Assembly: GCF_001447785.1 (NCBI RefSeq)
Contig: NW_015167086.1
Coordinates: forward strand, 62,001-126,000
Source: Gekko japonicus
Lineage: Eukaryota
DNA: 64,000 bases
Direction of reading: 5' to 3'
Shown: one piece after another, positions 14,601-63,403 of the stretch
How positions within the stretch are numbered: the first letter of the stretch is position 1
Layout: each line of letters opens with the position of its first letter
Notes under the pieces: model-generated
Databases searched by the model: none
The model's input: the letters and a program-made list of their open reading frames with translations, nothing else
Told to the model about the DNA's origin: nothing
Translations under genes and position numbers: made by a program

Positions 14601-15637
14601 CATGTCACTTCCGACCCATGGCGACAACAGACTAGGAGACTCGGGTTCAAATCTCCAGTCTGTCATTAAGCTTGCTGGATGACTGTGGGTGAGCCGCATC
14701 CTCTTTCTTCCAACCTATCCTACCTCACGCACCCCTGACCTAGGCGGCCCAGGGTAGCCCAATCTCACCAGATCTCGGGGAAGCTAAGCAGGGTCAGCCC
14801 TCGAAAACCCCATAAGGGGTCGCCATGTTAGCTGCAACTTATTTATTTTTTATTTATTTTATTATATTTATACCCCACCCTCCCCGCGAACGGGCTCAGG
14901 GCGGCTCACACAGGCACTAGGTGCGTTCAGTATTCAAATACATAATACAAAGTTAAAACAAATTAAAATCAGTTAGACGGATGCGTATATAAACTCCTCA
15001 CATTTTGCGTAGCAGGGAGGGAAGGCCGGGTGATGAAAGATGTTACTCAACCACCCTAGCAGTCTCTCTCTATAAAAGGGCGTTGGTGTAAGTGGCCGCG
15101 GCGGCTCCTACTCGTAAGCCTGGCGGAAGAGTTCTGTCTTGCAGGCCCTGCGGAACTGCACCAGGTCCCGCAGGGCCCTGATCTCTTCCGGGAGCTCATT
15201 CCACCAGGTAGGAGCCGCCAATGAAAAAGACCTGGCCCTTGTTGCCACCAGCTTGGCCTCCTTAGGGCCTGGGGTCACCAGCTGGTGGTGTGACCCCGAC
15301 CGAAGTGCTCTTCAGGGAACACTTGACAGCACACCCTACCTCACGGGATTATGATGTGTATAAAAATGGAAGGGAGGGAGGAGGATGTCGTAAGCCGTTT
15401 TGGGTCTCAGTTGGGGAGAAGATGGGGGATGAATAAACAAACAAACACGGCACCATGATCTTGGGCAGTACACACAACCTGCATCGCAGGATGACCCGAT
15501 CTGAATGAAAAGATCCTAGTGTGAAACTGTTCTGACCTTCCGCAGCCAAGGGGGAAGGGGGGCTGACTGAAAGCAGACGATGCCGTGGGTGGCTGTTCCT
15601 GGACTGGAGACCTAACCATCTCTCTCCTCCCCTGCAG

Positions 15638-15845
15638 CTGAAGATTTCATTCAGCGAGAACCAGCTGGAGAGGACCTTCCAGTACCCATCGGAGGGTTCC
15701 CTGCTGGAGGAGTTCGGCCCCCCTGAGGAGTCAGAGACTTTGGTGTCTACCAACCCCCATGGGGACGAGGAGGAGGAAGAGGAGGAGCTGCTGATGCTTC
15801 ATCGTGGCCTCCCTGGCCTATTGAGGACCAAACCCCTCATCGTGG
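15638..15845 (+). CDS. PPP1R18: Phostensin (PP1 regulatory subunit 18), penultimate coding exon
   Basis: ctgcag acceptor and GTGAG donor. Translates LKISFSENQLERTFQYPSEGSLLEEFGPPEE...EEEELLMLHRGLPGLLRTKPLIV, matching the phostensin C-terminus including the KISF PP1-docking motif. Synteny upstream of DHX16 as in the MHC. Confidence 0.93.
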
Positions 15846-16764
15846 GTGAGTGCCTGGGAGCCTCCGGAGCTGCCGCCGTGGTGTGCCTGAGAGCATCGTG
15901 GTCATTCCGAGAACGTTGCTCCCCCCCCCACACGCTCAGACTAAATTTTGTTTTAATTGTAGCTTATGTTTTAATGTAACTTATCTATTTTATGTAAGCT
16001 GCCCTGAGCCAGCTTCGGACAAGAGGGTGGGGTAGAAATTCAAAAAATAAATTAAATAAATAAATTTAGGGCATTTTCACAAAAGTCCTTGACAGAGTTA
16101 CACCCTTCTAGGCCCCTTGGCTTTATTGGACTTAGGAGGGTATAACTCTGCTTAAGACTGCACCGTTAGAAACTCATTGAATCAAGACAAGTTGGCAGCT
16201 GGCCGCCAGAAAGAGAGGGGAATGCCTGGTAGACAAACGGTCATGTCTTACTGAGAAGTAGTAGAAGAAGAAGAAGAGATTGGATTTATACCCCGCCTTT
16301 CACTACCCAAAGGAGTCTCAGAGCGGCTTACAAACTCCTTTCCCTTCCCCTCCCCACAACAGACACCCTGTGAGGTAGGCGGGGCTGAGAGAGCTCTTGA
16401 CAGAAACTGCTCTTTTTCAAGAACAGCTCTGACAGAACTATGACTTGCCCAAGGTCATCCAGCAGGTGCAAGTTGAGGAGTGGGGAATCAAACCCAGTTC
16501 TCCCAGATTAGAGTCCGCACACTTAACCACCACACCAAGTAGAAGCCTCACATGAATTACCAGACCAGACCAGACCGTGTCTGGTAGCAGGTGGAGGCTT
16601 TAGATGTCTGAATGCTCCCCAACATAAAATATTCCCTACACATACAAAACGAATGTGACAGAGTGAGTGAATTGATTTATTCCAGTCAAAGACTAGCCCA
16701 AAAGCAAATACATTACAAGAAATGATACCTTTAAGAAGTTATGCGAATTATATTGAAATAAGCC

Positions 16765-16990: not shown

Positions 16991-17713
16991 CACCCATAGT
17001 GGCAGAATAGGACTTCAGAGATCTGGGTTCAAATCTCCACTCTGCCATGAAACTTATTCTATGACCTTAGGCCAGTCAACTCTCTTTCGGTTGTTGTGAG
17101 GATAAAGCAGAGATGGGAGAACTATGTCTGCAACCCTGAGCCCCTTGGAGGAAGGGAGGAAGGCCAATGTGGTTCATCAAATGAATACAAGGCTCTGACA
17201 GCTGCAGAGAGTCTGGCCGCTTTATCCGTGATCCGAGGCTCGTGGGTCAAGAGGAGAAAGGCAATAGACAATGCCTTCGATCTACCTGGAATTTTGGGGA
17301 GGAGTAATGAAACCATGTGTAAAATCACAATTAAAAAGGGAGTGCAATACAACGTGCCCCACTTCCCCTCTTGCAGAAGAACATATACATTCCTGGTACA
17401 GTGCACCACGATATCTCCCTTCTAAGAGTGCAGAGGATAGGAAAACATGACAGAAAATAGTTTTGGGTTAGCCTTTTCTTTCATATGTTCTTGGGCAAGG
17501 GGATCTGAAGAAACCAAACACACTTTTCAGATATTTACTATTTATTGTATATATTTTTGTTTTATACGTCCTCCATAAAATCCACTCAAACCATCTGAAG
17601 AAGTGGGGGTCCAGACCATGAAAGCATATGGTAGAGTAAAATGGTGTTAGTTTTTAAGGTGCCGGTTGACTCCTGTTTTATTTTTGATGCAACGAACTAA
17701 CACGGCTGCCCAA

Positions 17714-17918
17714 CAATGTTCCCTCTAAGCAGAGTTAGTGTGAGCTAGCTCAGTTTTTTTAGCCTCCGGCTCACACATTTTTCTCTTAGCTCAGGAAGGA
17801 TGGCTCCAGAGCAAACTGATTTATGCAGTAGCCAAATCGCTCGCTCACAGCTTTAATGCCAGGAGCTCACAAAGTAGCATTTTTGCTCACAAGACTCCAC
17901 AGCTTAGAGGGAGCATTG
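17714..17918 (+). mobile_element. ~205-bp hAT MITE (CAGTGTTCCCTCTAAG termini); further copies at 12378-12583, 36312-36518, 41438-41643, 52338-52546, 62107-62313, partial ~13655-13714
   Basis: Near-identical copies with 8-bp TSDs: ctgcccaa, ctcacagg, atgagtgg, gtaaggac. Confidence 0.9.
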
Positions 17919-18333
17919 CTGCCCAACTAGAGTTATTGTCCTGTACGGTCTGCATACAAGGATGAGGAATTAAAATAAGCCTTGGTGAAAAAGCTGTAGA
18001 AACTAATTCAAATGTAGATCCCAGGAAACTGCCCTGGGGATGGGTGGGAATTGTGCTTGTCAAGCTGAAGCAAAGCTGTGCATCTAAATGTTAGAAATAA
18101 AGAAGTTTTGTTTTACAAACAGGCCCTTGCAATGCAATCCTAAGAATCACCCTCTTCTAAACCCACTGAATTCAATGGGGTTTAGAAAGGTCGATTGTTT
18201 AGGAGGGCCATTGGAAGCCGATATTGGAGCTCCATCTAGAGGCCCATCTTGAGAACTGCAGTGACTTTTGGAAATCCTCGTACCTAAGGTTTGGGGAGAG
18301 CATTCAAGTAGGCTTCTTGGGCTTCCTTATTAG

Positions 18334-19257
18334 CAGGCCCGTAGCCAGGATTTCTTGTGTCGAGGGGGCCTTTAAATTTCTCGGGGACGCCTAATTGATT
18401 TGGTTAAAGTAAGTTAAATTAAGTGCCCCTTTCACATAGCTGCATTTGATGGCCTCCTCCTCTCCTTCCCCACGCCATTCTCCCTTCTACAGGGGCCGGA
18501 AGGCAGGTGGGAAGGTGAGGCAGTGGAGGAGTGCGCCTGTGCACACTTGCCCACTAAGAGGCCCTTCAGCCAGCCAAGGCTGAGCGCGGCCGGCCTAGGA
18601 CAGAGCGCTGCTGCACCCGCCTCATTTTGTCTCCGCTCTCCTCCACTCTGTTCGGCGGAGGCGGTGCTGCTGTTTTTCCCCACCCCCTCCCCCCCCCCCC
18701 CCCTAACAGCAGCCGTAGGCCAAGCCCTGGTAGTAGCCACCGCTACGCACGCCTCGTTTTACCCCGGCCAGCTGCCTGCCCACCATGGCCTGCGTGGGGC
18801 AGGGCTGCTCATTTTTCATTGCATATATTCATACAGGCGGCCATCCCGGGAAGAAGCGCTGCTGCTGCAGCTGCCTCGTCTCCGCTCTCCCCCACACGCT
18901 CCACCCTCTGCTTGGCAGCAGCGTCACTGCCGTCTTTCCGCCCCCTCCCCCGGTAACAGCAGCAGCAGACCAGGTCTGGGTAGCAGCCGCTGCTGCTGTG
19001 TGCACCTCGTCCTCCCCCAGCCAGCAGCCTGCCCACCATGGCCCGCGTGGGGCTGCTGGTTCTTCATTGTGTGTATTCGTACAAGTGGGGCTGCTGGCAG
19101 GTGGAGAAAGGGGAGTCCTCTGGGCAGTGGCGGCGAGTCCTCTGGGCAGCGCTCAGAGTCGGGGGGGCCTGGGCTGTGTAGGAAGTCACTGGGGGGGCCT
19201 GGAAGGAGGTTGGGGGGCCAGGCCCCCCAGGAGGCCCCACTGTTGCTGCGGGCCCTG
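18334..19257. mobile_element. GC-rich non-autonomous hAT-type DNA transposon
   Basis: TIRs caggcccgtagc / gctgcgggccctg; 8-bp TSD cttattag; absent from the paralogous site in repeat A' (~22573). Confidence 0.88.
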
Positions 19258-19323
19258 CTTATTAGTGCCTCCATCCCCTTTTTACCCTGACAAGCCCGGT
19301 TTTCTTTCTGTCTTCCTTCCCAG

Positions 19324-19343
19324 ATGAGTCTTGTCGGCGGTAA
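19324..19343 (+). CDS. PPP1R18: Phostensin terminal coding exon (DESCRR*)
   Basis: Polypyrimidine tract plus CAG at 19321-19323. The phase-1 join G|AT GAG TCT TGT CGG CGG TAA gives DESCRR-stop, the known phostensin C-terminus. Confidence 0.92.
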
Positions 19344-20108
19344 CCCCACCCGTCCTTCTCCGTCACCAGGAAAGATGGAGGATATTTAAGGATTCATGTC
19401 AACCTTCAAGTCCCTCAACTGGACTTTTATGTCCTTTCGTCTTCCACTGACTCTTACACCAGGGAAAGAAGCTGGGACCATGCCAGACTGGACCGTTTTG
19501 CCCATTTTCCTAGGGCTCTGGGTGTTTCTCTCTTCACGATGGGAGAAAGCGCTTGAAAGACACCTTCATCGATATTGTTGTTCTATCTCTAGCACTGAAA
19601 AAGGGACCTCAGAAACTCCCCCACCCGAAATCTAAATGGCAAGGATCTGGGTCACGTGACAGGCTGCCCAATCTAACCTGTACAAAGAGACTGCATCCAC
19701 ATGGTTTTGACTGAAAGGAAATCTTTTTTTCTTTCTTATCCTGATGCTAAAACAACTTAGGAACAAAGAGGTTAAAACAGCCAGCAGGGCGGAGCAGCAA
19801 ACCTCATGCCCGTCTGCCGGCCTCCAGCGTTGCAGGCGATCCCCAGCCAAGGGCTGATTTCTCCTTGCTGTTTCCCAAACACAGCCCACACTGGGTGGAG
19901 GGATGTTTCTAATTCCCAGATCAACCTTTTTGTAAAATCCTTTAGGATCCTTGTCAGATCAACCTTTTTTGTAAAATCCTTTAGGACCCTTGTCATTTTA
20001 AAATTTTCTAATCGCTGCCATGTTGTGGGAGGGGAGTTGGAGGGGGGAGGGAGGGACTAGCTTGGGGGGGCGGGGCCATTTCTTTCTTTCCCGTTAATTC
20101 AGAACATA

Positions 20109-20114
20109 TTTATT
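20109..20114 (-). terminator. RIOX1 polyadenylation signal followed by decayed poly(A) remnant
   Basis: AATAAA on - about 20 nt after the stop; GAAAGAAAGAAA follows at 20090-20079. Confidence 0.7.
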
Positions 20115-20132
20115 TTGTTCATCCATGACACA

Positions 20133-21953
20133 TTACGCAGAAAACAGAGGGCTCTTAGTAATCAGCAATCCCTTTTCAAACAAAACAGTGGCTAAAGCAA
20201 TCTTATCATCCAAGGTGACACATGGAAGGTCTTCCACACTGACATACTTCGGGTAAGAAGAGAGCAAGAATTCAATACCATCTGTATATTCTGGCTCGAT
20301 TTCACAGTACTTGGGCTCCTCCTTATGATACACCCTTGAATTTTCTGCGGTGTAATACAGCAGTGTTTTGTCTCCTTCGTTGCACAGCCTGACGATTCCA
20401 TACCGAAGCAACCGTACTTGCGTATTTTCACTGAATGGGACGTCGACGTCTCGCACGTCTCCATTCTCCCACCGGGCAGGAAGTCCATATACACTGAGCG
20501 TCTTTTCAGTCTCAGTCAGCACTGGAGGGAGGCAGTCGTGGAAGAAACCCTTGGCTTTTTGATCCACCGCAGCGTCGACTGGTGCATAGTTCATTAGTTT
20601 AGTGATCAAAGTCTGGACCTTTTTCATAAAGGCGGTTCTGCGAGGATCAATCACATCGGAGTTCACGACTCCTGTGTATGCCAGGTAATCTGTAGGGAGA
20701 CCCTGGCGGTATTCCACATCCTCCTCAATGGCCATCTGCAAAGCTGCAGGAAGGAGTTTTTCCAACAAGTCTCCCCAGGAGTTTCTCTGGAACGAGGAGA
20801 CAGTTATGTGGAGTGAATGGGCATCGGGGAGGCAGTCCCCTTGATGGATAAACCCCCGTGGAAAATACAGCAGGTCCCCAGCCTCTAATACGGTTTCCAG
20901 AACCGGCTCCCCGATCTCCTCCTGAGCAAAGTTGGGGCTTGAAAACTGGGGCAACACCTCCGCTTCTTTCCGAGGGCTGTAAACCCGCCAGTGCTTCTTC
21001 CCTTCGAGCTGGACGACAAAGGCTTCGATGTCGTCATAATGAGGAGCAAAGCCCTGAGTGCCGGCAGGAGTCAGGTAAGTGTTGGCTCCGACCATGCTGC
21101 CAAACTGCTCCTGCAAGAGAGACAGGAAGTGCCAGACTGTGGCAGAAAAGGCCTGGGGGTTCAGCATCCTGAGGGAGCAGCCGTTCCGGTAGAAGTCCCA
21201 CACCACGGCCGGCAGGGCCCTGCCCAGCGGATTGTGCGTCTCCCTCTTCCCGTCTTCGTAGCTAGTCACGTCCAAGTTCACACCGAACTGGACCTCTTGG
21301 TCGCGCAGGACGGCATCAAACTCGGCCGTGGAAAAGAGCCCCTGGTAGTAAGCCGGGTTGCGCCGGCGGATGAGGAGGGGCTTCTTCTCCCAGTGCTGGC
21401 CGAAGAACCGCTGTGAGGAGACGGGGGCGATCAGCCACTCGAAGAGCCTGGCTGCCTTCTCCCGGCTGTGCTGGACCTCCCCCAGCTCCTGAAGGAGGTG
21501 CCGGAGCGAGGGGCCTGCCTGAAACTGCTGGGCAGAAGCTCGCTCCTTTTCCTGTCCCGCCGCTGGTGGTGCAGCCGCAGCCGAGCAACTTTCGCCCGCC
21601 ATCGGACTCCGTTCACGGTTCTCCTGCAGCGCCACTCTTGGGCCGGATGAGGTAGCCACAAGACGAGAGCGCAGTTTCATCCTCCGTCTCTTTGCTAGCT
21701 TCGCTGCTGCAGCATCCACCACCGTCGGGACAGGATGGGAGTCTAAGGGATGTTCCCCATTGGCGGCCCCTGAAGGAACGGGGCAAGCCCCGGGTGTTCG
21801 CCTCTTAGTACGCCGTTTCTTTATCTTCTGGCTTCCGGGGGAGACAGTCGGGCTGTGGGCTAGGCAGGGTGGCTGCTCATGTGGACCTCCACGTGGCGCC
21901 ATTGAACGGTAGGCAGAGAGAGCAGACACAGGTGCTCTCCGCAGCTCCTCCAT
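20133..21953 (-). CDS. RIOX1: Ribosomal oxygenase 1 / NO66 (JmjC histidyl hydroxylase), single-exon CDS, probable retrogene
   Basis: 606-aa uninterrupted ORF. JmjC motifs are intact: YLTPAGTQGFAPHYDDIEAF (HxD), GKKHW (2-OG Lys) and GFIHQG (distal His). The C-terminal dimerisation/winged-helix region ends LATVLFEKGLL. Confidence 0.96.
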   Translation of the reverse strand: MEELRRAPVSALSAYRSMAPRGGPHEQPPCLAHSPTVSPGSQKIKKRRTKRRTPGACPVPSGAANGEHPLDSHPVPTVVDAAAAKLAKRRRMKLRSRLVATSSGPRVALQENRERSPMAGESCSAAAAPPAAGQEKERASAQQFQAGPSLRHLLQELGEVQHSREKAARLFEWLIAPVSSQRFFGQHWEKKPLLIRRRNPAYYQGLFSTAEFDAVLRDQEVQFGVNLDVTSYEDGKRETHNPLGRALPAVVWDFYRNGCSLRMLNPQAFSATVWHFLSLLQEQFGSMVGANTYLTPAGTQGFAPHYDDIEAFVVQLEGKKHWRVYSPRKEAEVLPQFSSPNFAQEEIGEPVLETVLEAGDLLYFPRGFIHQGDCLPDAHSLHITVSSFQRNSWGDLLEKLLPAALQMAIEEDVEYRQGLPTDYLAYTGVVNSDVIDPRRTAFMKKVQTLITKLMNYAPVDAAVDQKAKGFFHDCLPPVLTETEKTLSVYGLPARWENGDVRDVDVPFSENTQVRLLRYGIVRLCNEGDKTLLYYTAENSRVYHKEEPKYCEIEPEYTDGIEFLLSSYPKYVSVEDLPCVTLDDKIALATVLFEKGLLITKSPLFSA

Positions 21954-21982
21954 GCTTCAGGTCCGGATGTGGAGACTGAGAG

Positions 21983-23362
21983 AAGCTGTGTATCAAAATG
22001 TTAGAAATAAAGAGGTTTTGTTTATTTGTTTTACAAACAGGCCCCTGCAATGCAATCCTAAGAATTACCCCCTTCTAAACTCACTGGCTCAGAAGTTAAG
22101 GCGCTGAGCTGCAGACCAGAAAGTCTGTAGTTCGGCAGTTCGAGACCCGAGTGCCGCGTGACGGAGTGAGCTCCCGTCTCTGGCCCCAGCTCCTGCCAAC
22201 CTAGCAGTTCAAAAGCAAGAAATTGCAAGGAGATAAAATAGTGGGAAGGTAACAGTGTTCTGTGCAACTCGACGTTTAGTCATGCCGGCCACATGACCAT
22301 GGAGAATTCTTCGGACAGTGCTGGCTCTTCGGCTTGGAAACGGAGATGAGCACCGCCCCCCCAGAGTTGGATGTGACTAGCTTTCAAGCAAGGGAAACCT
22401 TTACTAAATCCACTGAATTCAATGGGGTTTACAGAGGTTAACTGTGTAGGATGGCCATTGGAAGCCAATATTGGAGCTCCATCTGGAGGCCCATTTTGAG
22501 AGCTAGAATGACTTTTGGAAATCCTGGTACCTAACGTTTGGAGAAGAGCATTAAAGGGGGCTCTTGGGCTCCCTTATTCATGATTTCCTCCCCCTTTTTA
22601 CCCCGATAATTCCTGTTTTCTTTCTGTCTTCCCTTTCTAATAAGTGTTGTCAGTGGTAACCCCACCCATCCTTCTCCATCACCGGGAAAAATTGAGGCTA
22701 TTTAAGGATTCGTGTCACCCTTCAAGTCCCTCAAACTGGACTTTTGTCTTCCACTGACTCTTACACCAGGGAAAGAAGCTGGGACCATGCCAGACTGGAC
22801 CGTTTTGCCCATTTTCCTAGGGCTCTGGGAGTTTCTTTCTTTACGATGGAAAAAAGCATTTGAAAGACACCATCTATATTTTTGTTTTAACTCCAGCACT
22901 GAAAAAGTGACCTCAGAAACCCCCCCACCCGAAATCTAAACAGCAAGGATCTGGGTCACGTGACAGGCTGCCCAATCTAACCTGTACAAAGAGACTGCAT
23001 CCACATGGTTTTGACTGAAAGGAAATCTTTTTTTTTTCCTTATCCTGATGTTAAAGCAACTTAGAAACAAAGACATTAAAACAGCCAGCAGGGCAGAGCA
23101 GCAAACCTCATGCCCGTCTGCCGGCCTCCAGCGTTGCAGGCGATCCCCAGCCAAGGGCTGATCTCTCCTTGCTATCTCCCAAACACAGCCCACACTGGGC
23201 GGAGGGATGTTTCTAATCCCCAGATCAACCTCCTTTTTTTGCAAAATATCTGGGAGTTATCCTTTAGGACTCCTGTTATTTTAAAGTTTTCTAATTGCTG
23301 CCATGTTGTGGGAGGGAAGTTGGAGGGAGGAGGGAGGGACTAGCTTTGGGAGGGGGGGCAAT
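21983..23362 (+). repeat. Direct repeat copy A' with decayed PPP1R18 terminal exon
   Basis: Second copy of 18073-20080. The acceptor and coding part are degenerate at ~22637-22659 (ctaataagtgttgtcagtggtaa versus ccagatgagtcttgtcggcggtaa). Interrupted by a Sauria SINE. Confidence 0.92.
22087..22403 (+). mobile_element. Sauria SINE
   Basis: Full body with ACCTTT tail; ~12-bp TSD ctaaactcactg/ctaaatccactg; absent from repeat copy A. Confidence 0.88.
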
Positions 23363-24799
23363 TTTGGTGGCCAACAACCTATCAGTATTGGGGACGGATC
23401 TGTACCAAGGATGGTGGACGGGGTATTTCTAACAGTCTTTTTAAAATGCCGTTCTGGAACAAGGAAATTCCAAATGGTATGGCTATCTGGGTTGTTACAA
23501 CCAAGTAACAGTTGGTATTAAGGCATAGAAGTGGGCAAACATGGACTACAAAACTTGTGTTTAGAAGTCAAGAAAGGGAGGCAGCTGGGTGTGGAGACGG
23601 CAAACAACCAAGTGGTCTTTGCCCCACCCACTTCCTGTCTGGCATTCAGAACTCAAAACAGGATTGGACAAGTGGGCACGAAGGAGAGGGTGGGACTGAA
23701 TGGATAAGCAGAGGCAGGTTGAATGTTAGAAAATGGACTGGTATCTTGACATACTTTTTAAAAAAAATGATCATTCACTGTAAATGAATGTTAACCATTC
23801 CTCACAGCATGGCATTCTGAAGTAGGGAGGGGGCAAAGAGAGTAATTTAGAGAAGGCTTTTAAAAAAAATGTCAGCATGCACAGCAGTCACAACAACTGG
23901 AAATACTGACATTCAGGACTTTGAGGACTCTCGGACAAGACAGTGCATTCAACCAATGGCGGGAACAGCTCAGATTCCTCTGTGCCAATGACTCAAGCCC
24001 AGCCCCTGGCGAACAGAACAGTGTTCTGGAGGTGTAGGGGCAAATAGGCCAATAGGCAGTGGCAAGCTTGGTCATGACTAAAACCAGGTCATGTGGTGCT
24101 ATCATCTGAAGGTGGTACTCAGTTTCTTCGAACAACCTCACCCCATCCTTCTGCTGGGATCAGAGCCCTGTCAGCCACCCCTCCACGCGTGCGACTCTCG
24201 TTCTGCTGAAAACACACAACCACGCTGGAAAGGTCAGATCCAAGGGGCAGTGTTTCTTAAACGCCTATCCGGGAATCCCCCCACCTATGAAACATACGTG
24301 TCTTGTGGAAAACTTGTGTTCGATGGCTTGTGGGAAAAGGGTGTGAGAGCGGACGCAGACTGTGAGGACGGAGGAGCGATGAATGTATGAGAGGAGAGAG
24401 TTGTGACTGTAGGAGCACCAGGGGTTAGTCAAAATGTGGGGGGCAGAGTGTGGACCGAGCAAGAAGCATGAGTGAGCGGATGAAGGAAGTGCAGAGGGGA
24501 AGGCACAAAGAAAACGGTGTGTTTCTTCCCTCTTTCCTTCCTTACTAATTTATCTTGTTACCTGTGCACAGTTTTTATTATCTTCCCCCCCCCTTCTTTT
24601 GCACTGTGGGAACAGCCGTGCCTACAGCCCGGGAACAAGTCAGCGAGAGAATGACTGGGCATGGCAGACATCTCGTCCTCTTACAGAGGCAGAATGGAGC
24701 CTTGCCCGGATCAGTGTACGTGAGGGGAGGGCTGAAGCAGCTGTGTCCAGCCATTTCCATCAGTGTTTTTTTATATATATTATTATTATTAATAATAAC

Positions 24800-24805
24800 A
24801 ATAAA
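24800..24805 (+). terminator. Candidate ancestral PPP1R18 polyadenylation signal
   Basis: AATAAA after an AU-rich tract, at the end of the unique sequence that continues from repeat copy A'. Confidence 0.5.
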
Positions 24806-25149
24806 TCAGAATGATGTTGCACGCTGATTCACCTTGTCTGCTGTGTTGTATCAGCCATGATAGCCAAACAGACTTCCATGAGCAGAGACAATATGCCTTT
24901 GAATGTAAGATGCTAGGAGGAAACAACAGAAGATTGTTGCCTTCAGCAGTTCACCTGTGCAGCTCCGAGAGGCGTCTGTACTCACTGCCGGGAACTAAAT
25001 ACGTTAACTTTGGTGTGCCTGAGGAGTGCTTTTATCTTTATTCATTGTCTTTACAGCACTCTGCCAAGGGGGAAGAGCAACCTCTCTTGAGTTGTGAAAC
25101 CACAGAAGGGCCAAAAGGCCATATCCTGCTTCAACACTCAAAGACTGTG

Positions 25150-27240
25150 CACTGGAACAGTTGGTCACAGAACCAACGAGAGGGGTGGTAATCCTGGACT
25201 TGGTTATGAGCCAGGCTCAAGACCTGCTGAGAGATGCAGACGTTGCTGCACCAGTTAGAAACAGTGACCACAATGCTATTTAATCAATGGAAAATTACCC
25301 CCTGAAGTCCAAAACTGTGACTTTTTATTTCAAAAGAGGGAACCTTACAAAAATGAGGGAAATAGTTAAAAGGAAGCTGAAAGGGAAACACAAGAGAGTC
25401 AAATCCCTAGAGGATGCCTGGAAGCTACTTAAAACTACACTAATTGAGGCCCAGATAGAATGCATTTCACAGGCTAGGAAAGCCACTGCCAAGTCTAAAG
25501 AATGCCAGCATGGTTAACAACAGAAGTCAAGGAAGCTATGAAAAGTAAAGAGGCTTCTTTTAAAAAGTGAAAGGTCTGCCCCAGTAAATTGAATGAAACG
25601 GACCACAGGCTCTGGCAAAAGAAATGTCAGTCGATAATCAGGCATGCAAACAGTGAATTTGAGAAGCAGGTTGCTAGAAGCATCAAGAAAAACAGTAAAC
25701 ATTCATTTAAATATATCTGGAGCAGGAAACCAGCCAGAGAAGCAATGAGCAAAGAATAAAGGGACTGCTAAAGGATGACAGGGAGATGGCAGAGATGCTC
25801 AATTAATTCTTTGCTTCTGTATTCACTGTGAAAAGTGTGGGGCTTGTACCCATGCCACAGCCACTATTTTCAGGAAGGGAGTCTAACCCAGTACTGAGTC
25901 AAAAAGTCCTGCCTCACCAGCCTTTTGGAGTTCTTTGAGAAACTGAACAAGCATGTAGAAAATGTTGACCAAGTAGACATTATATACTTCGACTTTCAAA
26001 AGGCTTTTGATAAGGTATCTCACCAAAGAGGACAGGTTCTCTTAAGGATTAAAAACTGGGAAAGAAGACGGGTTCCCTTAAGGATTAAAAATGGGTTAGA
26101 TGATTGGAAGCAAAGAGAAGGGGGGAAATGAGCAGTTCTCACAGTGCAGGGAAGTAAGCAGTGAGGTCCCACAAGAATCAGTATTTTATTTATTAATGAT
26201 CTTTATGAATGATCCTTATTTAGGGGTGAGTAGTCAAATGGCCAGATTTGCAGATGACACAAAGTTATTCAGGATGTTGAAAACCAAGGATGACTCCACA
26301 AACTGGGTGAGTGGGCAGCAATGTGGCAAAAGTGCAATGGTGGTAGATGTAAGGTGATGCAAATTGGAACAAAAAATCCCAGCTTCTGGTAAAGGCTAAT
26401 GAAGTCTAAACTTGCTGAGACTGAGAGGAAAAAAGAACTTGGGGTTGTAGTAGATAGCATAATGAAAGTGTCAATCTAATGTGCTGCAGCAGTGAAAAGG
26501 GCAAACTCTATATTGGGTATTATTAAGAAAGGGACTGAAAACAAAATGGCCAATGTTATGATGCCCCTGTATAGATCTATAGTGCAGCCTCCTTTGGAGT
26601 ACTGTGTGCAGTTCTGGTCACTGTATTTCAAAAAGGACATTGCAGAGCTGAAAAAAGTACAGAAGAGGGCAATCAGAATGATTAAAGGATTAGAGCACCT
26701 TCCCTATGAGGAAAGGCTGAAGAATCTGGGACTCTTGAATTTAAAAAAGAGACAACACAGGGTGTGTGTGTCATAGGATAGAGGTTTATAAAATTATGCA
26801 CAGGGTGGAGAGAGCTAACAGAACTTTTTCTCCCTCTCCCAAAATACTAGAAGTCAAGGGCAGTGAATGAAGCTGATGGGGAGTAGATTCAGGATCGACA
26901 AAAGGAAATAATTCTTTACAAAGCAAATGATTAAAATGTGGAATTCGCTGCCAGAGATGTAGCGATGGGCACAGGCATAGACAGCTTTAAAGGGGGATTA
27001 GACAGACTCATGGAGGATACATCTATTAGTTACTACTAGCCATGGTGACTAAAGGAAAACTCAGCGTTCACAGACAGTAAACCTTTGAATCCCAGAGCCA
27101 GGAAGCAACATCAGCACAAGCCTCATCCTCTATGCTGTATTGCTGGACCTCCAGAGAAACAGGTTGGCCACTGTGTGAGACAGGATGCTGGATGAGAAGG
27201 ACCACTGGTCTGATCCAGCAGGGCTCTTATGTTATGCTCT
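25150..27240 (+). mobile_element. Degraded CR1 LINE (ORF2 and 3' end)
   Basis: Fragmented RT motifs DFQKAFD, FADDTKLF and LEYCVQFWS; CR1-type 3' tail. Confidence 0.88.
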
Positions 27241-27439
27241 TATGCTAACACAACAGTGTTCACCTCTCAGTCCCCCACAAATTAAGTCATGCAGTCTTCA
27301 ACCATAGTTTGCCACAAGAAGAGAACAAATGTTCAACAGAACATCAGGGAGGGGCCCTGGCTCAGTGGCAGAGCACCTGCTTCAGATGCAAAAGGTCCCA
27401 GGTTCAGTCCCCAGTTCCTGCAGTTAGAGGATGCCAAAT

Positions 27440-29630
27440 GCTTTCCTGATAGGCTCCTGTGCCTTCTGTGTCCCTTGTGGAAAGTGGGGGACATGTATGC
27501 ATGCCACAGACCCTATTTTCAGGAAGGGAGTCTGAAGAACTGAGCCAAATTGAGGTGACCAGTGATGAAATTCTAAACCTACTGGGTATATTAAAAACTG
27601 ATAAGTCTCCAGGTCTTGATGGCATACACTGAGAGTACTTAGGGAACTCAGTTGTGAGATAGTTGATCTACTAACCCATATAGGTAACCTATCACTAAAT
27701 TCAGCCGCTGTACCAGAAGACTGGAGAGTAGCAAATGTGCCACCAATTTTTCGAAAGGGATCCAGAGGCGAACCAGGAAATTACAGGCCAGTCAGCCTAT
27801 CACCAGTCCCAGGCAAATTAGTATAAACTGTAATCAAAAATAGAATTGTTAGGCACATAGAGGAACAAAGCCTGCTGAGGAAAAAATCAACATAGCTTCT
27901 GCAAAGGTCCTGCCTCACCAACCTTTTGAAGTTCCCCGAGAAACTGAACAGGCAGTGACCCAGTAGATATTATATACTTGAACTTTCAAAAGGCATTTGA
28001 CACGGTACCTCACCAAAGATTCCTGAGTAAACTTAGCAGTCATGGGATAAGAGGATGGGTTCTCCTATGGATTAAAAACTGGTTAAATGATGGGAAGCAA
28101 AGAGTAGGAATCAACGGACACTTCTCACAATGGAAGGAAGTAAGCTGTGGGGTCTCACAAGGATCGGTACTGGGGCCAGTACTATTTAATGTATTCATCA
28201 GTCATTTGGAACTAGGGCTAAGTAGTATAGTGGCCAAGTTCGTAAATGACACAAAATTATTCAGGATCATGAAAACCAAGGCTGGCTGTGAAGAACTCCA
28301 AAAGGACCTCCACAACCTGGGTGAGTGGGCTACTATGTGGCAAATGAAGTTCATTGTTGGTAAGTGTAAGGTGATGCACATTGGGACAAAAAATCCCAAC
28401 TTCAAGTATAGGCTAATGGGATCTGAACTTGCTGAGACAGGGGAAAGGATTTGAGGGGGTCGTAGTGGATAGCTCAATGAAACATAAGAACATAAGAGAC
28501 ACCAATGTTGGATCAAGCCAAAGGCCCATCCAGTCCAACACTCTGTGTCACACAGTGGTCAGAAATACCAGGTGCCATCAGGAGGTCCACCAGTGGGGCC
28601 AGGACATTAGAAGCCCTCCCACTGTTGACCCCCCCCCCAAGCACCAAGATGACAGAGCATCACTTGCCCCAGAGCCCCTATCTATACCTTGTGGCTAATA
28701 GCCACTGATGGACCTCTGCTCCATATGCTTATCTAATTCCCTTTTGAAGCCGTCCATGCTTGTAGCCGCCACCACTTCCTGTGGCAGTGAATTCCATGTG
28801 TTAATCACTCTTTGGGTGAAGAAGTACTTCCTTTTATCCGTTCTAACCCGACCACTCAGCAATTTAATTGAGTGCCCACAAAAGTGTCAACCCAGTGTGC
28901 TGTATCGATGAAAAAGGCAAACTCTATGTTAGGGATTAGGAAAGGGATTGAGAATAAAACGGATGATATCGTAATGCCCCTGTATAGATCTATGGTGTGG
29001 CCTCATTTGCAATACTGTGTACAGTTCTGGTCACCATATCTCCAAAAGGAACAAAGGACATTGCAAAGCTGGAACAAGTACAGAGGAGGGCAACCAAAAT
29101 TATTAGGGGGTTGGAGAACAAGTATCTGGGACTTTACAGTTTAGAAGAGACAACTAAAGGAGGACATGATAGAAGTTTATAAAATTATTCTTGGAATGGA
29201 AAGAGTTGGCAAAAAGAATTTTTTCTCCCTCTCCCAAAATACTAGAACTTAAGGGCATTAAATGAAACTGACAGGCAGTAGGTTCAGGATGGGAAAAAGG
29301 AAATACTACTTTACACAGAGAGTGATTAAAATGTGGAATTTGCTGCCAGAGGATGTAGTGATGGCCACAGGAATAAAAAGCTTAAAGGGGGATGTAATAG
29401 ATTAATGGAGGATAAATCTATCAATGACTACTAGCCATGGTGACTGAGGAGAACCTCCACATTCAGAGGTACTAAGCCAGAGCCAGAAGGCAACATCAGG
29501 AGAAGGCCTTGACCTCTATGCCCTGTCGTTGGCTGTCCAGAGGAACTGGTTGGCCACTGTGTGAGACAGGATGCTGGACTAGATGGACCACTGGTCTGAT
29601 CCAGCAAGTCTCTTCTTATGTTCTTATGAA
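27440..29630 (+). mobile_element. Degraded CR1 LINE with nested inverted CR1 3' end (~28481-28880)
   Basis: NYRPVSL-like and FQKAFD...GVSQGSVLGPVLFNVFI motifs; the nested piece is nearly identical to 32570-32952 in reverse. Confidence 0.88.
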
Positions 29631-30154
29631 TAACCAAATGCTGTTCCAGCCATCAAATAGCTTGGAAAAAAGCACCATATTAATAGTTGTTAAAGGCACA
29701 GGAGCGTGTCAGAAAAACAGCTGAGCACCTCTTACTGGCTCCGTTTAGAAGCTGTGTTGGATTTACTGCCTTTAGTTTTGGGAGTTTGATGGCTACATAA
29801 TGGCTAGAAATACAAACAGCAAACTTTTCCCACCATGGAGAGGCAATGATGAGGGAAACGCTTCTTTTGTACTTCTTTACACTATGTGAGGATTATATTT
29901 GTACAGATGGGCCCATTTCAGTTAATGTACCTTGATCAAGCAAGCATCTAGCTTTGTATGGAGAATTGACTTAATTGTGAAAATTTCTCATACAGACCTT
30001 TTCTTCTGCATTAAGGGGGAATAGTAATCTGCCTTGGAAGTTCCTGGGAAGGCTGACAAAATCATAAATCCCTAAAGAAAAGGGCTTTGGTAGGCCTGGG
30101 TTGCAGGTAACCACATTGGCCCAAAGCAAAATCCAAACATACACCATATACATA

Positions 30155-30377
30155 AATCCAGATGGTCAGCCGTATTGGTCTTTAGCAGTGGAATAAATTT
30201 AGAGTCCAGTGACACCTTTAAGAGCAACAAAGGTTTATTCAAGGTATAAGCTTTCGTGTGCAAGGCACACTTTTTCAAATACCATTCCAATGTATTTGAA
30301 AAAGTGTGCCTTGCACACCAAAGCTCATACCTTGAATAAACCTTTGTTAGTCTTAAAGGTGCCACTAGACTCTAAAT
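30155..30377. mobile_element. Inverted pair of Penelope-like element termini (palindrome)
   Basis: ~92-bp arms centred at 30287/30288; same family as fragments at ~1980-2405, 14020-14150, 17590-17705 and 31575-31710. Confidence 0.75.
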
Positions 30378-30859
30378 CCGTTCTACCATATACATAAGAC
30401 AGTGTGCAACCTTTCCAGTTTTGGACGATACACGTGGTAGTGCGGGAAAGCTAGAGTCACATGCGAACTTACTTCAGAGTAAATCCCACTGAATAAAACT
30501 CGTTACTCCCAGTAAATATGCAGCGATGCAGACTGTGTCCGCTTCTTCCTGCTAATACAAACCAAATATTTTAGTGCCACCCACAGCAAGAGAGGCACAT
30601 ACAACTATCACGATAGGTATTTCTGTATTTATAATGAAAAATTGCGGCTCTGTCCTGACGATTACAATGCATAGCCACAGCCAGACCGGCAGGCTCAGAT
30701 TATTTAAACACGTACCGTGGAAGAGTCAAAACTCCACACACCCGCCTTTCCAGTACTGAAGAGTCTAAAGTCAAGCCGGCTGTCCACTCTACTTCTTATA
30801 CAAAACACGCAGGATCTTTCGCCACACCAAGGCATAAAGCATGCATACAAGAAAGTAGC

Positions 30860-31122
30860 CAAGGACCTCCCCTTACCGCCGGAAACTCAAGCTACGTGAC
30901 ACTCTAGCCTTTCACTTCTCTATCGTAAACCTATCTCGCGCCTTATGCCTGTGAGATAAGAATCCGAAACCCGTCCTTTCCCTGTGTCTATGGTTGGTCT
31001 CCAACACCGGAACTTATTCTTTCCGTGAGCTCTGATTGGCTAGGAGAATCACGAACACGAAAGAGCAGCTGCAACGGCGACCGGAAGAAGCCGTTTGGGG
31101 GGCGATTTTGTCCCCCTCAACC
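30860..31122. promoter_or_regulatory. DHX16 CpG-rich housekeeping promoter, possibly bidirectional
   Basis: Several ETS CCGGAA sites (~30879, ~31007, 31081), a CCAAT box as ATTGG at 31035-31039 and TCTCGCG at 30934, directly upstream of the Kozak-context ATG (accATGG). Confidence 0.75.
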
Positions 31123-62687
<31,565 letters not shown>

Positions 62688-63306: not shown

Positions 63307-63403
63307 NNNNNNNNNNNNNNNNNNNNNNNNNNNNNNNNNNNNNNNNNNNNNNNNNNNNNNNNNNNNNNNNNNNNNNNNNNNNNNNNNNNNNNNNNNNNNN
63401 NNN
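63307..63403. other. Assembly gap
   Basis: Run of N. Confidence 0.99.

What the first reader, a model, noticed from the sequence alone, without database searches (positions are those of the whole stretch)
21953..31020. Hypothesis: RIOX1 uses the DHX16 promoter bidirectionally through a new ~8.9-kb 5' UTR intron
Seen on - strand: just upstream of the RIOX1 ATG is a 3' splice site-like sequence, TTCTAAC (branch A at 22001) ...cacagcttctctCAG|tctccacatccggacctgaagcATG, with the AG at 21977-21976. The branch point comes from the duplicated A' segment. In the DHX16 promoter there is a strong - strand donor, GCG|GTAAGG (30877/30876), and 30877-31020 has no - strand ATG. RIOX1 and DHX16 are head-to-head. 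Known: retrogenes often gain expression from bidirectional CpG promoters through new 5' UTR introns. Inference: a spliced leader would co-regulate a ribosomal oxygenase with a spliceosomal helicase.
Basis: inference. Interest (0 to 1): 0.8.

Follow-up and report, generated by a model that had tools for sequence, protein, structure and literature searches.

The report
RIOX1 spliced leader from DHX16 promoter
RNA reads show that this lizard-type genome's intronless RIOX1 gene is transcribed from non-coding leader exons beside the DHX16 start and spliced across an 8.5-8.7 kb intron, a real but familiar way for a relocated gene to borrow a neighbour's promoter.

Summary

- **Junction reads.** In one raw RNA-seq run, reads covering the RIOX1 5' end stop matching at 21985. 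They continue with letters that match the window exactly once each.
  - 16 reads, plus a contig from a second study, continue at 30473-30502.
  - 5 reads continue at 30716/30717-30746.
- **Introns.** On the - strand these are canonical GT..AG introns:
  - 30472-21986, 8,487 nt, GAA|GTAAGT;
  - 30715-21986, 8,730 nt, ACG|GTACGT.
- **Acceptor.** It lies inside the duplicated A' flank, 3 nt before the RIOX1 insert.
Use of donor 30877 and AG 21977-76 was not seen and is not excluded.
- **Promoter.** The leader reaches at least 30746. That is 377 nt from the DHX16 ATG (31123, + strand) and in the same CpG island.
- **Still inferred.** The start site was not mapped, so promoter sharing, co-regulation and "new" remain inferences.

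The mechanism is well documented for retrocopies. This is a new example, not a new kind.

The parts
20133..21953 (-). RIOX1 (NO66) coding sequence: one uninterrupted ORF of 606 aa, stop codon included
   Evidence: ORF. PDB match to human NO66 at E 1e-190 over residues 149-603. Pfam JmjC_2 and RIOX1_C_WH. Expressed at depth 20-115 in X21.
20093..21985 (-). RIOX1 terminal exon as transcribed. The 5' edge is fixed by junction reads. The 3' end is approximate.
   Evidence: Loose ends at 21985 and 21986, a contig break at 21985 and a pile of read starts at 20093. - strand AATAAA at 20116-20111. In-frame TGA 6 nt before the ATG; A at -3 and G at +4.
21986..22006 (-). The 3' splice site in use: TTCTAAC (22006-22000), a weak pyrimidine tract and AG 21987-21986. 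All of it lies in the duplicated flank A'.
   Evidence: This is the first AG downstream of the branch-like A at 22001. By a rough score it is a weak site, rank 118 of 521.
21976..21977 (-).
   Evidence: No loose end or joint is listed at 21975. 102 weaker loose ends were not shown, so minor use is not excluded.
21986..30472 (-). Major 5' UTR intron, 8,487 nt, GT..AG
   Evidence: 16 X21 reads and one X1 contig (166 further letters) continue past 21985 with a 30-mer. That 30-mer matches the window only at 30473-30502. Donor GAA|GTAAGT.
21986..30715 (-). Minor 5' UTR intron, 8,730 nt, GT..AG
   Evidence: 5 X21 reads continue with a 30-mer that matches only 30717-30746. One shared base lets the cut sit at ACG|GTACGT.
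30473..30548 (-). Leader exon before the major donor. 30473-30502 is shown by reads. The 5' edge at 30548 is inferred from the best acceptor.
   Evidence: The acceptor tattagcag|GAAG scores best in 30715-30503. No ATG lies in this exon.
30716..30755 (-). Leader exon before the minor donor. 30716-30746 is shown by reads. The 5' edge is unknown: 30755 if an acceptor is used, otherwise the exon continues upstream.
   Evidence: ctcttcag|TACTGG is the best acceptor in 30876-30747.
30877..31020 (-). Use is untested.
   Evidence: Second-best promoter-proximal donor by rough score. Free of ATG. This stretch lay outside what was laid with reads.
30250..31750 (.). CpG island holding the RIOX1 leader exons and DHX16 exon 1
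   Evidence: CpG observed/expected 0.72-0.90. CCAAT at 31039 (-). CCGGAA at 30879, 31007 and 31081.
31123..31329 (+). Coding part of DHX16 exon 1
   Evidence: Matches human DHX16 residues 6-70, E 1.6e-16. Helicase motifs follow on the + strand at 38691, 48214, 51152 and 53127.
21983..23364 (.). A': the upstream copy of the direct duplication that flanks RIOX1. It supplies the 3' splice site.
   Evidence: K2P distance to A is 0.10 over 1,044 nt.
18073..20081 (.). A: the other copy of the flanking duplication. It carries the same acceptor-like sequence at its 18073 end.

Best explanation
**Transcription unit.** RIOX1 here has several exons. Transcription starts on the - strand inside the CpG island that also holds DHX16 exon 1.

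**Leader and splicing.** One or more short non-coding leader exons are made. The transcript is then spliced across 8.5-8.7 kb to an acceptor at 21985, 32 nt before the RIOX1 ATG. The intron contains the PPP1R18 3' end in antisense and LINE debris.

**Isoforms.** Two exist:
- donor 30473 (GAA|GTAAGT), major;
- donor 30716 (ACG|GTACGT), minor.

These are either a skipped cassette exon or alternative donors within one exon.

**Origin of the acceptor.** The branch motif, tract and AG are not RIOX1 sequence. They lie in the duplicated host flank A', 3 nt from the insert boundary.

**Shown:** the two junctions, their strand, their link to the RIOX1 coding exon, and the collapse of RNA depth upstream of 21985 in a tissue with little PPP1R18 signal.

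**Inferred:**
- the start site lies within a few hundred nt of the DHX16 start site, so one bidirectional promoter serves both genes;
- the full leader may have four exons, which would leave all five upstream ATGs in introns;
- this is the main way the gene is expressed.
For: **Junction reads**
- In X21, depth over RIOX1 is 20-115. It falls to 0-3 beyond 22460.
- 16 reads have a loose end after 21985 and 5 after 21986, with agreement 1.0 and 0.91.
- In X1, from another study, the RIOX1 contig breaks at 21985. One branch carries the same loose letters for 166 nt.

**Where the loose letters belong**
- Each 30-mer has one exact match in the window, at 30473-30502 and 30717-30746. None was found in 100 shuffles.
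- Both cuts are GT..AG on the - strand (CT..AC on the + strand), so the RNA has the sense of RIOX1.
- 30473 is the best promoter-proximal donor and 30716 the fourth.

**Promoter context**
- The CpG island covers 30250-31750.
- The DHX16 ATG is at 31123, so the leader reaches to within 377 nt of it.

**Precedent**
- Carelli et al. 2016 (PMC4772013).
- AmphiSYCP1 and CHIC (PMC5803294).
Against: - The start site was not mapped, because the laid stretch ended at 25800. The leader could have a further exon whose start lies elsewhere.
- Only the 30 nt next to each junction were printed.
- In X1 about three quarters of the depth (35.2 of 46.8) runs on unspliced past 21985. In X4 the contig runs straight through to 22152. 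I attribute this to + strand PPP1R18 transcripts, but the libraries look unstranded, so a proximal RIOX1 start cannot be excluded there.
- No junction is listed for X20.
- The acceptor is weak by a rough score.
- Nothing was measured for DHX16 expression.
Confidence: 0.75

Rival explanations
1. RIOX1 is driven mainly by a proximal promoter of its own. Candidates are the CpG-rich 5' coding region, the A' flank and the SINE. On this view the spliced leader is a minor or tissue-limited isoform.
For: - The 5' half of the CDS is itself CpG-rich (observed/expected 0.65-0.78 at 21000-22000).
- Unspliced continuity across 21985 is seen in X1 (depth 35.2) and X4 (a contig covering 20079-22152).
- Human RIOX1 is a single-exon gene (PMC6006756).
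Against: - In X21, where the region 22460-24800 is almost silent, depth ends at 21985. There, 21 reads carry the leader.
- In X1, X4 and X20 the unspliced depth equals the depth of the whole 19900-24800 stretch. That stretch ends at a + strand AATAAA at 24800. This fits antisense PPP1R18 transcripts rather than a RIOX1 start.
Confidence: 0.12
2. The leader is real but comes from a separate - strand promoter, not from the DHX16 promoter. One option is an alternative first exon starting around 30550-30640. Another is an exon still further upstream, beyond DHX16 exon 1.
For: - The start site is unmapped.
- The major isoform is shown only for 30473-30502, plus 166 unprinted letters in X1.
- Good acceptors at 30548 and 30755 leave room for further upstream exons.
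Against: - Any start consistent with the data lies at or above 30638 for the major form and 30746 for the minor form. Those positions are less than 500 nt from the DHX16 ATG and inside the same CpG island.
- By the usual criterion of start sites less than 1 kb apart, that is still a bidirectional promoter.
- CCAAT and CCGGAA motifs sit between the two genes.
Confidence: 0.1
3. The junctions are artefacts: chimeric reads, or a genomic deletion allele that joins the two places.
For: Only two runs show them. The sampled animals differ from the window at many places and in the structure of the A end.
Against: - Two different donors join the same acceptor.
- Both have exact GT..AG ends at strong donor motifs.
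- The reads begin at several places.
- Two independent studies show them.
- A deletion would remove the 3' end of the + strand transcript, yet the same samples cover it.
Confidence: 0.03

Closest known systems
Retrocopies expressed from a neighbour's bidirectional promoter: the 'head-to-head integration' class of Carelli et al. 2016 (PMC4772013), following Fablet et al. 2009
   Same: - An intronless gene copy lies head-to-head with a housekeeping-type gene.
- A CpG-island promoter is involved.
- Non-coding 5' exons have been gained, which lets the copy use a distant promoter.
   Different: - Their class required the copy to lie within 2 kb of the neighbour. Here the coding exon is 9.2 kb away and only the leader exons are close.
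- The copy is flanked by a 1.3-2 kb duplication and has no visible poly(A) tail, so retroposition itself is not established.
- The gene sits antisense within another gene's 3' end.
Amphioxus SYCP1 retrogene and the CHIC promoter (PMC5803294)
   Same: - A single coding exon.
- A multi-exon 5' UTR that arose de novo and reaches the neighbour's start.
- Two isoforms that differ by one leader exon.
- A bidirectional promoter proposed from position.
   Different: - A different gene and lineage.
- In amphioxus the retrogene replaced a multi-exon parent. In amniotes RIOX1 was already intronless (PMC6006756), so this would be a second move.
- Here the acceptor was supplied by duplicated host sequence.
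Human, mouse and chicken RIOX1 (NO66)
   Same: An orthologous protein (E 1e-190 to human NO66) with an intronless coding sequence.
   Different: The human gene is described as one exon of 2,428 bp on chromosome 14, with no 5' UTR intron (PMC6006756). It is not described next to DHX16. No paper in the searched library mentions both genes.

Membership tests
Relocated or retroposed gene that uses a neighbour's bidirectional promoter | Intronless, intact coding copy of a known gene | tested here: met
   One ORF of 606 aa with JmjC_2 and RIOX1_C_WH domains, and an NO66 match at E 1e-190.
Relocated or retroposed gene that uses a neighbour's bidirectional promoter | Hallmarks of retroposition: poly(A) tail, short target-site duplication, parent gene elsewhere | tested here: inconclusive
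   - There is no clear poly(A) remnant at the 3' boundary.
- The flanking duplication is 1.3-2 kb, not 7-20 nt.
- A parent copy cannot be sought with these tools.
Relocated or retroposed gene that uses a neighbour's bidirectional promoter | Head-to-head orientation with a protein-coding neighbour | tested here: met
   RIOX1 is on the - strand and DHX16 on the + strand.
Relocated or retroposed gene that uses a neighbour's bidirectional promoter | Non-coding 5' exon(s) near the neighbour's start, spliced to the copy in RNA | tested here: met
   21 junction reads in X21 and a contig in X1. The loose ends map uniquely to 30473-30502 and 30717-30746.
Relocated or retroposed gene that uses a neighbour's bidirectional promoter | Divergent start sites less than 1 kb apart | tested here: inconclusive
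   The leader reaches at least 30746, which is 377 nt from the DHX16 ATG and in one CpG island.
Relocated or retroposed gene that uses a neighbour's bidirectional promoter | Co-expression of the two genes | not tested
   DHX16 lay outside the single stretch that could be laid with reads.

The most novel reading that the evidence does not exclude
The RIOX1 copy may have been "born spliced". On this reading it landed 3 nt behind a ready-made 3' splice site that already belonged to a DHX16-divergent, PPP1R18-antisense transcript. The same acceptor survives in copy A at 18075. The copy would then have been expressed from the DHX16 promoter from the day it was inserted. Since then its whole coding exon has lain inside the PPP1R18 3' UTR in antisense. 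That would make an obligate sense-antisense pair, driven from two ends of the same small block.
Probability: 0.25. Interest if true: 0.6.

Novelty: new member of a known kind. Interest (0 to 1): 0.42.

Why it matters
- **A clean vertebrate example outside mammals.** It shows how an intronless gene moved to a new place gets expressed. The promoter is borrowed from 8.5 kb away, the donors lie in the neighbour's CpG island, and the acceptor comes from duplicated host sequence right at the insertion boundary.
- **A testable regulatory link.** It ties a ribosomal oxygenase to the promoter of a spliceosomal helicase.
- **Antisense overlap.** The RIOX1 coding exon sits inside another gene's 3' UTR, which offers a case for studying antisense interference.
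- **Limits.** The mechanism is textbook for retrogenes. RNA-based genome annotation of this species probably already shows the leader exons.

Tried and rejected
I could not fetch assembled transcripts that encode the RIOX1 protein.
- I chose the acceptor side (19900-25800) and found the donors from the loose-end letters. The start site, the leader's inner structure and use of 30877 stay open.
- **Transposon origin of the major donor.** I suspected it, but blastn of 30390-30720 and 30720-31120 against the window found no other copy. I dropped the idea as unsupported.
- **Hosted small RNAs.** There is no Rfam family and no tRNA in 17000-33000, so no snoRNA explains the intron.
- **Splice scores** come from matrices built from remembered frequencies. 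They give ranks only. MaxEntScan and SpliceAI were not available.
- **Conservation in related species** could not be tested, because no collection of eukaryotic genomes is on hand.
- **The big protein searches** were not used. The protein's identity was already clear from PDB and Pfam.
Full report
**The observation**

The - strand reads as the finding says.
- TTCTAAC lies at 22006-22000. It is followed by cacagcttctctCAG|tctcc...gaagcATG, with AG at 21977-21976 and the ATG at 21953.
- GCG|GTAAGG has its exon end at 30877.
- Between 31100 and 30473 the - strand has ATGs only at 30846, 30842, 30835, 30672 and 30600. The stretch 30877-31020 is therefore free of ATG.

The gene identities hold.
- The ORF 20133-21953 (-) is RIOX1/NO66. 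It matches human NO66 structures at E 1e-190 and carries Pfam JmjC_2 and RIOX1_C_WH.
- The + strand ORF piece from 31123 matches human DHX16 residues 6-70 at E 1.6e-16.
- DEAH-helicase motifs follow on the + strand at 38691, 48214, 51152 and 53127.
- The genes are head-to-head, with their ATGs 9.2 kb apart.
- A Phostensin (PPP1R18) match on the + strand at 15536-15976 places PPP1R18 upstream of DHX16 in the same direction.

The motifs alone are weak evidence. By a rough matrix built from remembered frequencies, the acceptors at 21985 and 21975 rank 118th and 130th of 521 - strand AGs in the interval. The donor at 30877 is the second best among the promoter-proximal ones.

**RNA evidence**

One search for runs and one laying of reads were allowed. 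A laid stretch could have at most 6,000 letters, so the acceptor and donor could not go in together. I laid 19900-25800 with two raw RNA-seq runs (X20, X21) and two runs kept as contigs (X1, X4).
- In X21, RIOX1 is covered at 20-115 fold. The stretch 22460-24800 is at 0-3 fold, so the RNA ends near 21985.
- Exactly there, 16 reads go on with one 30-letter consensus (agreement 1.0). Another 5 reads go on, one base later, with a different consensus (agreement 0.91).
- In X1, from a different study, the RIOX1 contig (20078-21985) breaks at 21985. One branch carries the first consensus for 166 letters.

I searched those two printed 30-mers in the window only. Each has a single exact match, at 30473-30502 and 30717-30746, with none in 100 shuffles.

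Read on the - strand, the joins are as follows.
- ...gggatttactctgaa|GTAAGT ... cacAG|cttctctcag. This skips 30472-21986, which is 8,487 nt.
- ...gactcttccacg|GTACGT ... cacAG|c. This skips 30715-21986, which is 8,730 nt. One shared base allows this canonical cut.

Both are GT..AG on the - strand, so the RNA has the sense of RIOX1. Two donors joined to one acceptor, with exact consensus ends, in reads that begin at several places and in two studies, is splicing. It is not a chimera or a deletion allele.

**What is spliced to what**
- The acceptor in use is AG 21987-21986. It is the first AG downstream of the branch-like A at 22001, as the usual scanning rule for 3' splice sites predicts (established knowledge).
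It is not among the listed loose ends, although weaker ones were not printed.
- Alignment of the two flanking copies puts the start of A' at 21983 and of A at 18073. The branch motif, the tract, the AG and the first three exon bases are therefore duplicated host sequence.
- The RIOX1 insert begins at 21982. The same acceptor-like sequence survives in copy A.
- The 32 nt between the acceptor and the ATG contain an in-frame TGA 6 nt before the ATG. The leader adds no coding sequence, and the ATG has A at -3 and G at +4.

**The leader and the promoter**

The reads prove only 30473-30502 and 30716-30746. The leader reaches to within 377 nt of the DHX16 ATG. It lies in the same CpG island (observed/expected 0.72-0.90 over 30250-31750). 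Between the two genes are a CCAAT box (31039) and CCGGAA motifs (30879, 31007, 31081).

The best acceptors in the gaps are 30548 (tattagcag|GAAG) and 30755 (ctcttcag|TACTGG). A four-exon leader would fit:
- start site to 30877;
- 30755-30716;
- 30548-30473;
- 21985 onward.

The chance of this is about 0.04 if the ATGs were placed at random. This is inference. One long first exon with two alternative donors fits the reads equally well. Neither start site was mapped, so "one shared bidirectional promoter" is likely but not shown. Nothing was measured on co-regulation.

**Unspliced signal and the other strand**
- In X1 about 35 of 47 depth units continue unspliced past 21985. In X4 the contig runs through to 22152.
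- In X1, X4 and X20 the whole stretch 19900-24800 is covered at a similar level. The depth falls at about 24825, just after a + strand AATAAA at 24800. There is no + strand AATAAA or ATTAAA between 19300 and 22006.
- Three X20 reads show a + strand GT..AG joint from inside RIOX1-antisense (21074|21075) to the decayed A' copy of the last PPP1R18 coding exon.

The simplest reading is a + strand PPP1R18 transcript that runs through RIOX1 in antisense. That would account for the unspliced depth. The libraries look unstranded, so a proximal RIOX1 start in those samples cannot be excluded.

**Age and origin**
- A and A' differ by K2P 0.10 over 1,044 aligned nt, so the arrangement is old.
- RIOX1 is intronless in mammals and birds and has many exons in fish and amphibians (PMC6006756). 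An intronless coding sequence is therefore ancestral for amniotes, and this locus would be a later relocation or copy.
- I see no clear poly(A) remnant, and the flanking duplication is kilobase-sized. Retroposition is not established.
- Whether the intron is "new" could not be tested. No related eukaryotic genomes are on hand.

**Comparison with what is known**
- Carelli et al. [quoted passage not shown]
- The amphioxus SYCP1 retrogene has a multi-exon 5' UTR that arose de novo and reaches the CHIC promoter. It has two isoforms that differ by one leader exon (PMC5803294). This is a close parallel.
- No paper in the searched library mentions both RIOX1 and DHX16.

This is a new member of a known kind.

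**Housekeeping**
Exons were handled by reference, and only the two printed 30-mers were searched, in the window.
- The N run at 63307-63403 was left alone.
- The earlier notes of this scan that I used are first-reader notes on this same window. The "squamate" label comes from one of them and was not checked here.

Noticed in passing
window 19900-24825, + strand: RNA from X1, X4 and X20 covers the whole stretch evenly. The depth falls just after a + strand AATAAA at 24800. There is no + strand poly(A) signal between 19300 and 22006. A + strand (PPP1R18) 3' UTR therefore seems to run through the whole RIOX1 gene in antisense.
   Followed up: partly
window 21074|21075 to 22644|22645, + strand: A GT..AG joint seen in 3 reads of X20. 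Its donor AG|GTAAGT lies inside RIOX1-antisense. Its acceptor lies in the decayed A' copy of the last PPP1R18 coding exon. In A' the original cccag|ATGAGTC has become tctaataag|TGTTGTC.
   Followed up: partly
window 20040-20081 and 23365-23432: Reads and contigs of X1, X4 and X20 join 23423, plus 13-22 other letters, to 20078/20079. In the sampled animals copy A therefore continues about 60 nt further next to the RIOX1 3' end than it does in the window. The window's A end carries a deletion or another allele, and the flanking duplication is longer than the assembly shows.
   Followed up: partly
window 20082-20132: The RIOX1 3' boundary has no clear poly(A) remnant. The 3' UTR is only about 40-50 nt (AATAAA at 20116-20111 on the - strand; read starts at 20093). 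With the kilobase-sized flanking duplication, this does not look like a standard LINE-mediated retrocopy.
   Followed up: no
window 22087-22397: A SINE-like insert is present in A' only. Its contig depth is 50,000-119,000 and many reads are clipped at its edges. It lies 100 nt upstream of the RIOX1 acceptor, inside the intron.
   Followed up: no
window 18332-19274: A GC-rich insert of about 940 nt (65% G+C) with an internal repeat of about 250 nt is present in copy A and absent from A'.
   Followed up: no
window 28485-28867 and 32571-32953: Two inverted arms of 383 nt, 96% complementary, bracket the DHX16 promoter and the RIOX1 leader exons. One arm lies in the RIOX1 5' UTR intron and the other in DHX16 intron 1. 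LINE reverse-transcriptase debris (RVT_1) fills 25800-29700.
   Followed up: no
window 30188-30386: A near-perfect hairpin with 95-nt arms, 89% complementary and 9 nt apart, lies about 90 nt inside the intron, just downstream of the major donor.
   Followed up: no
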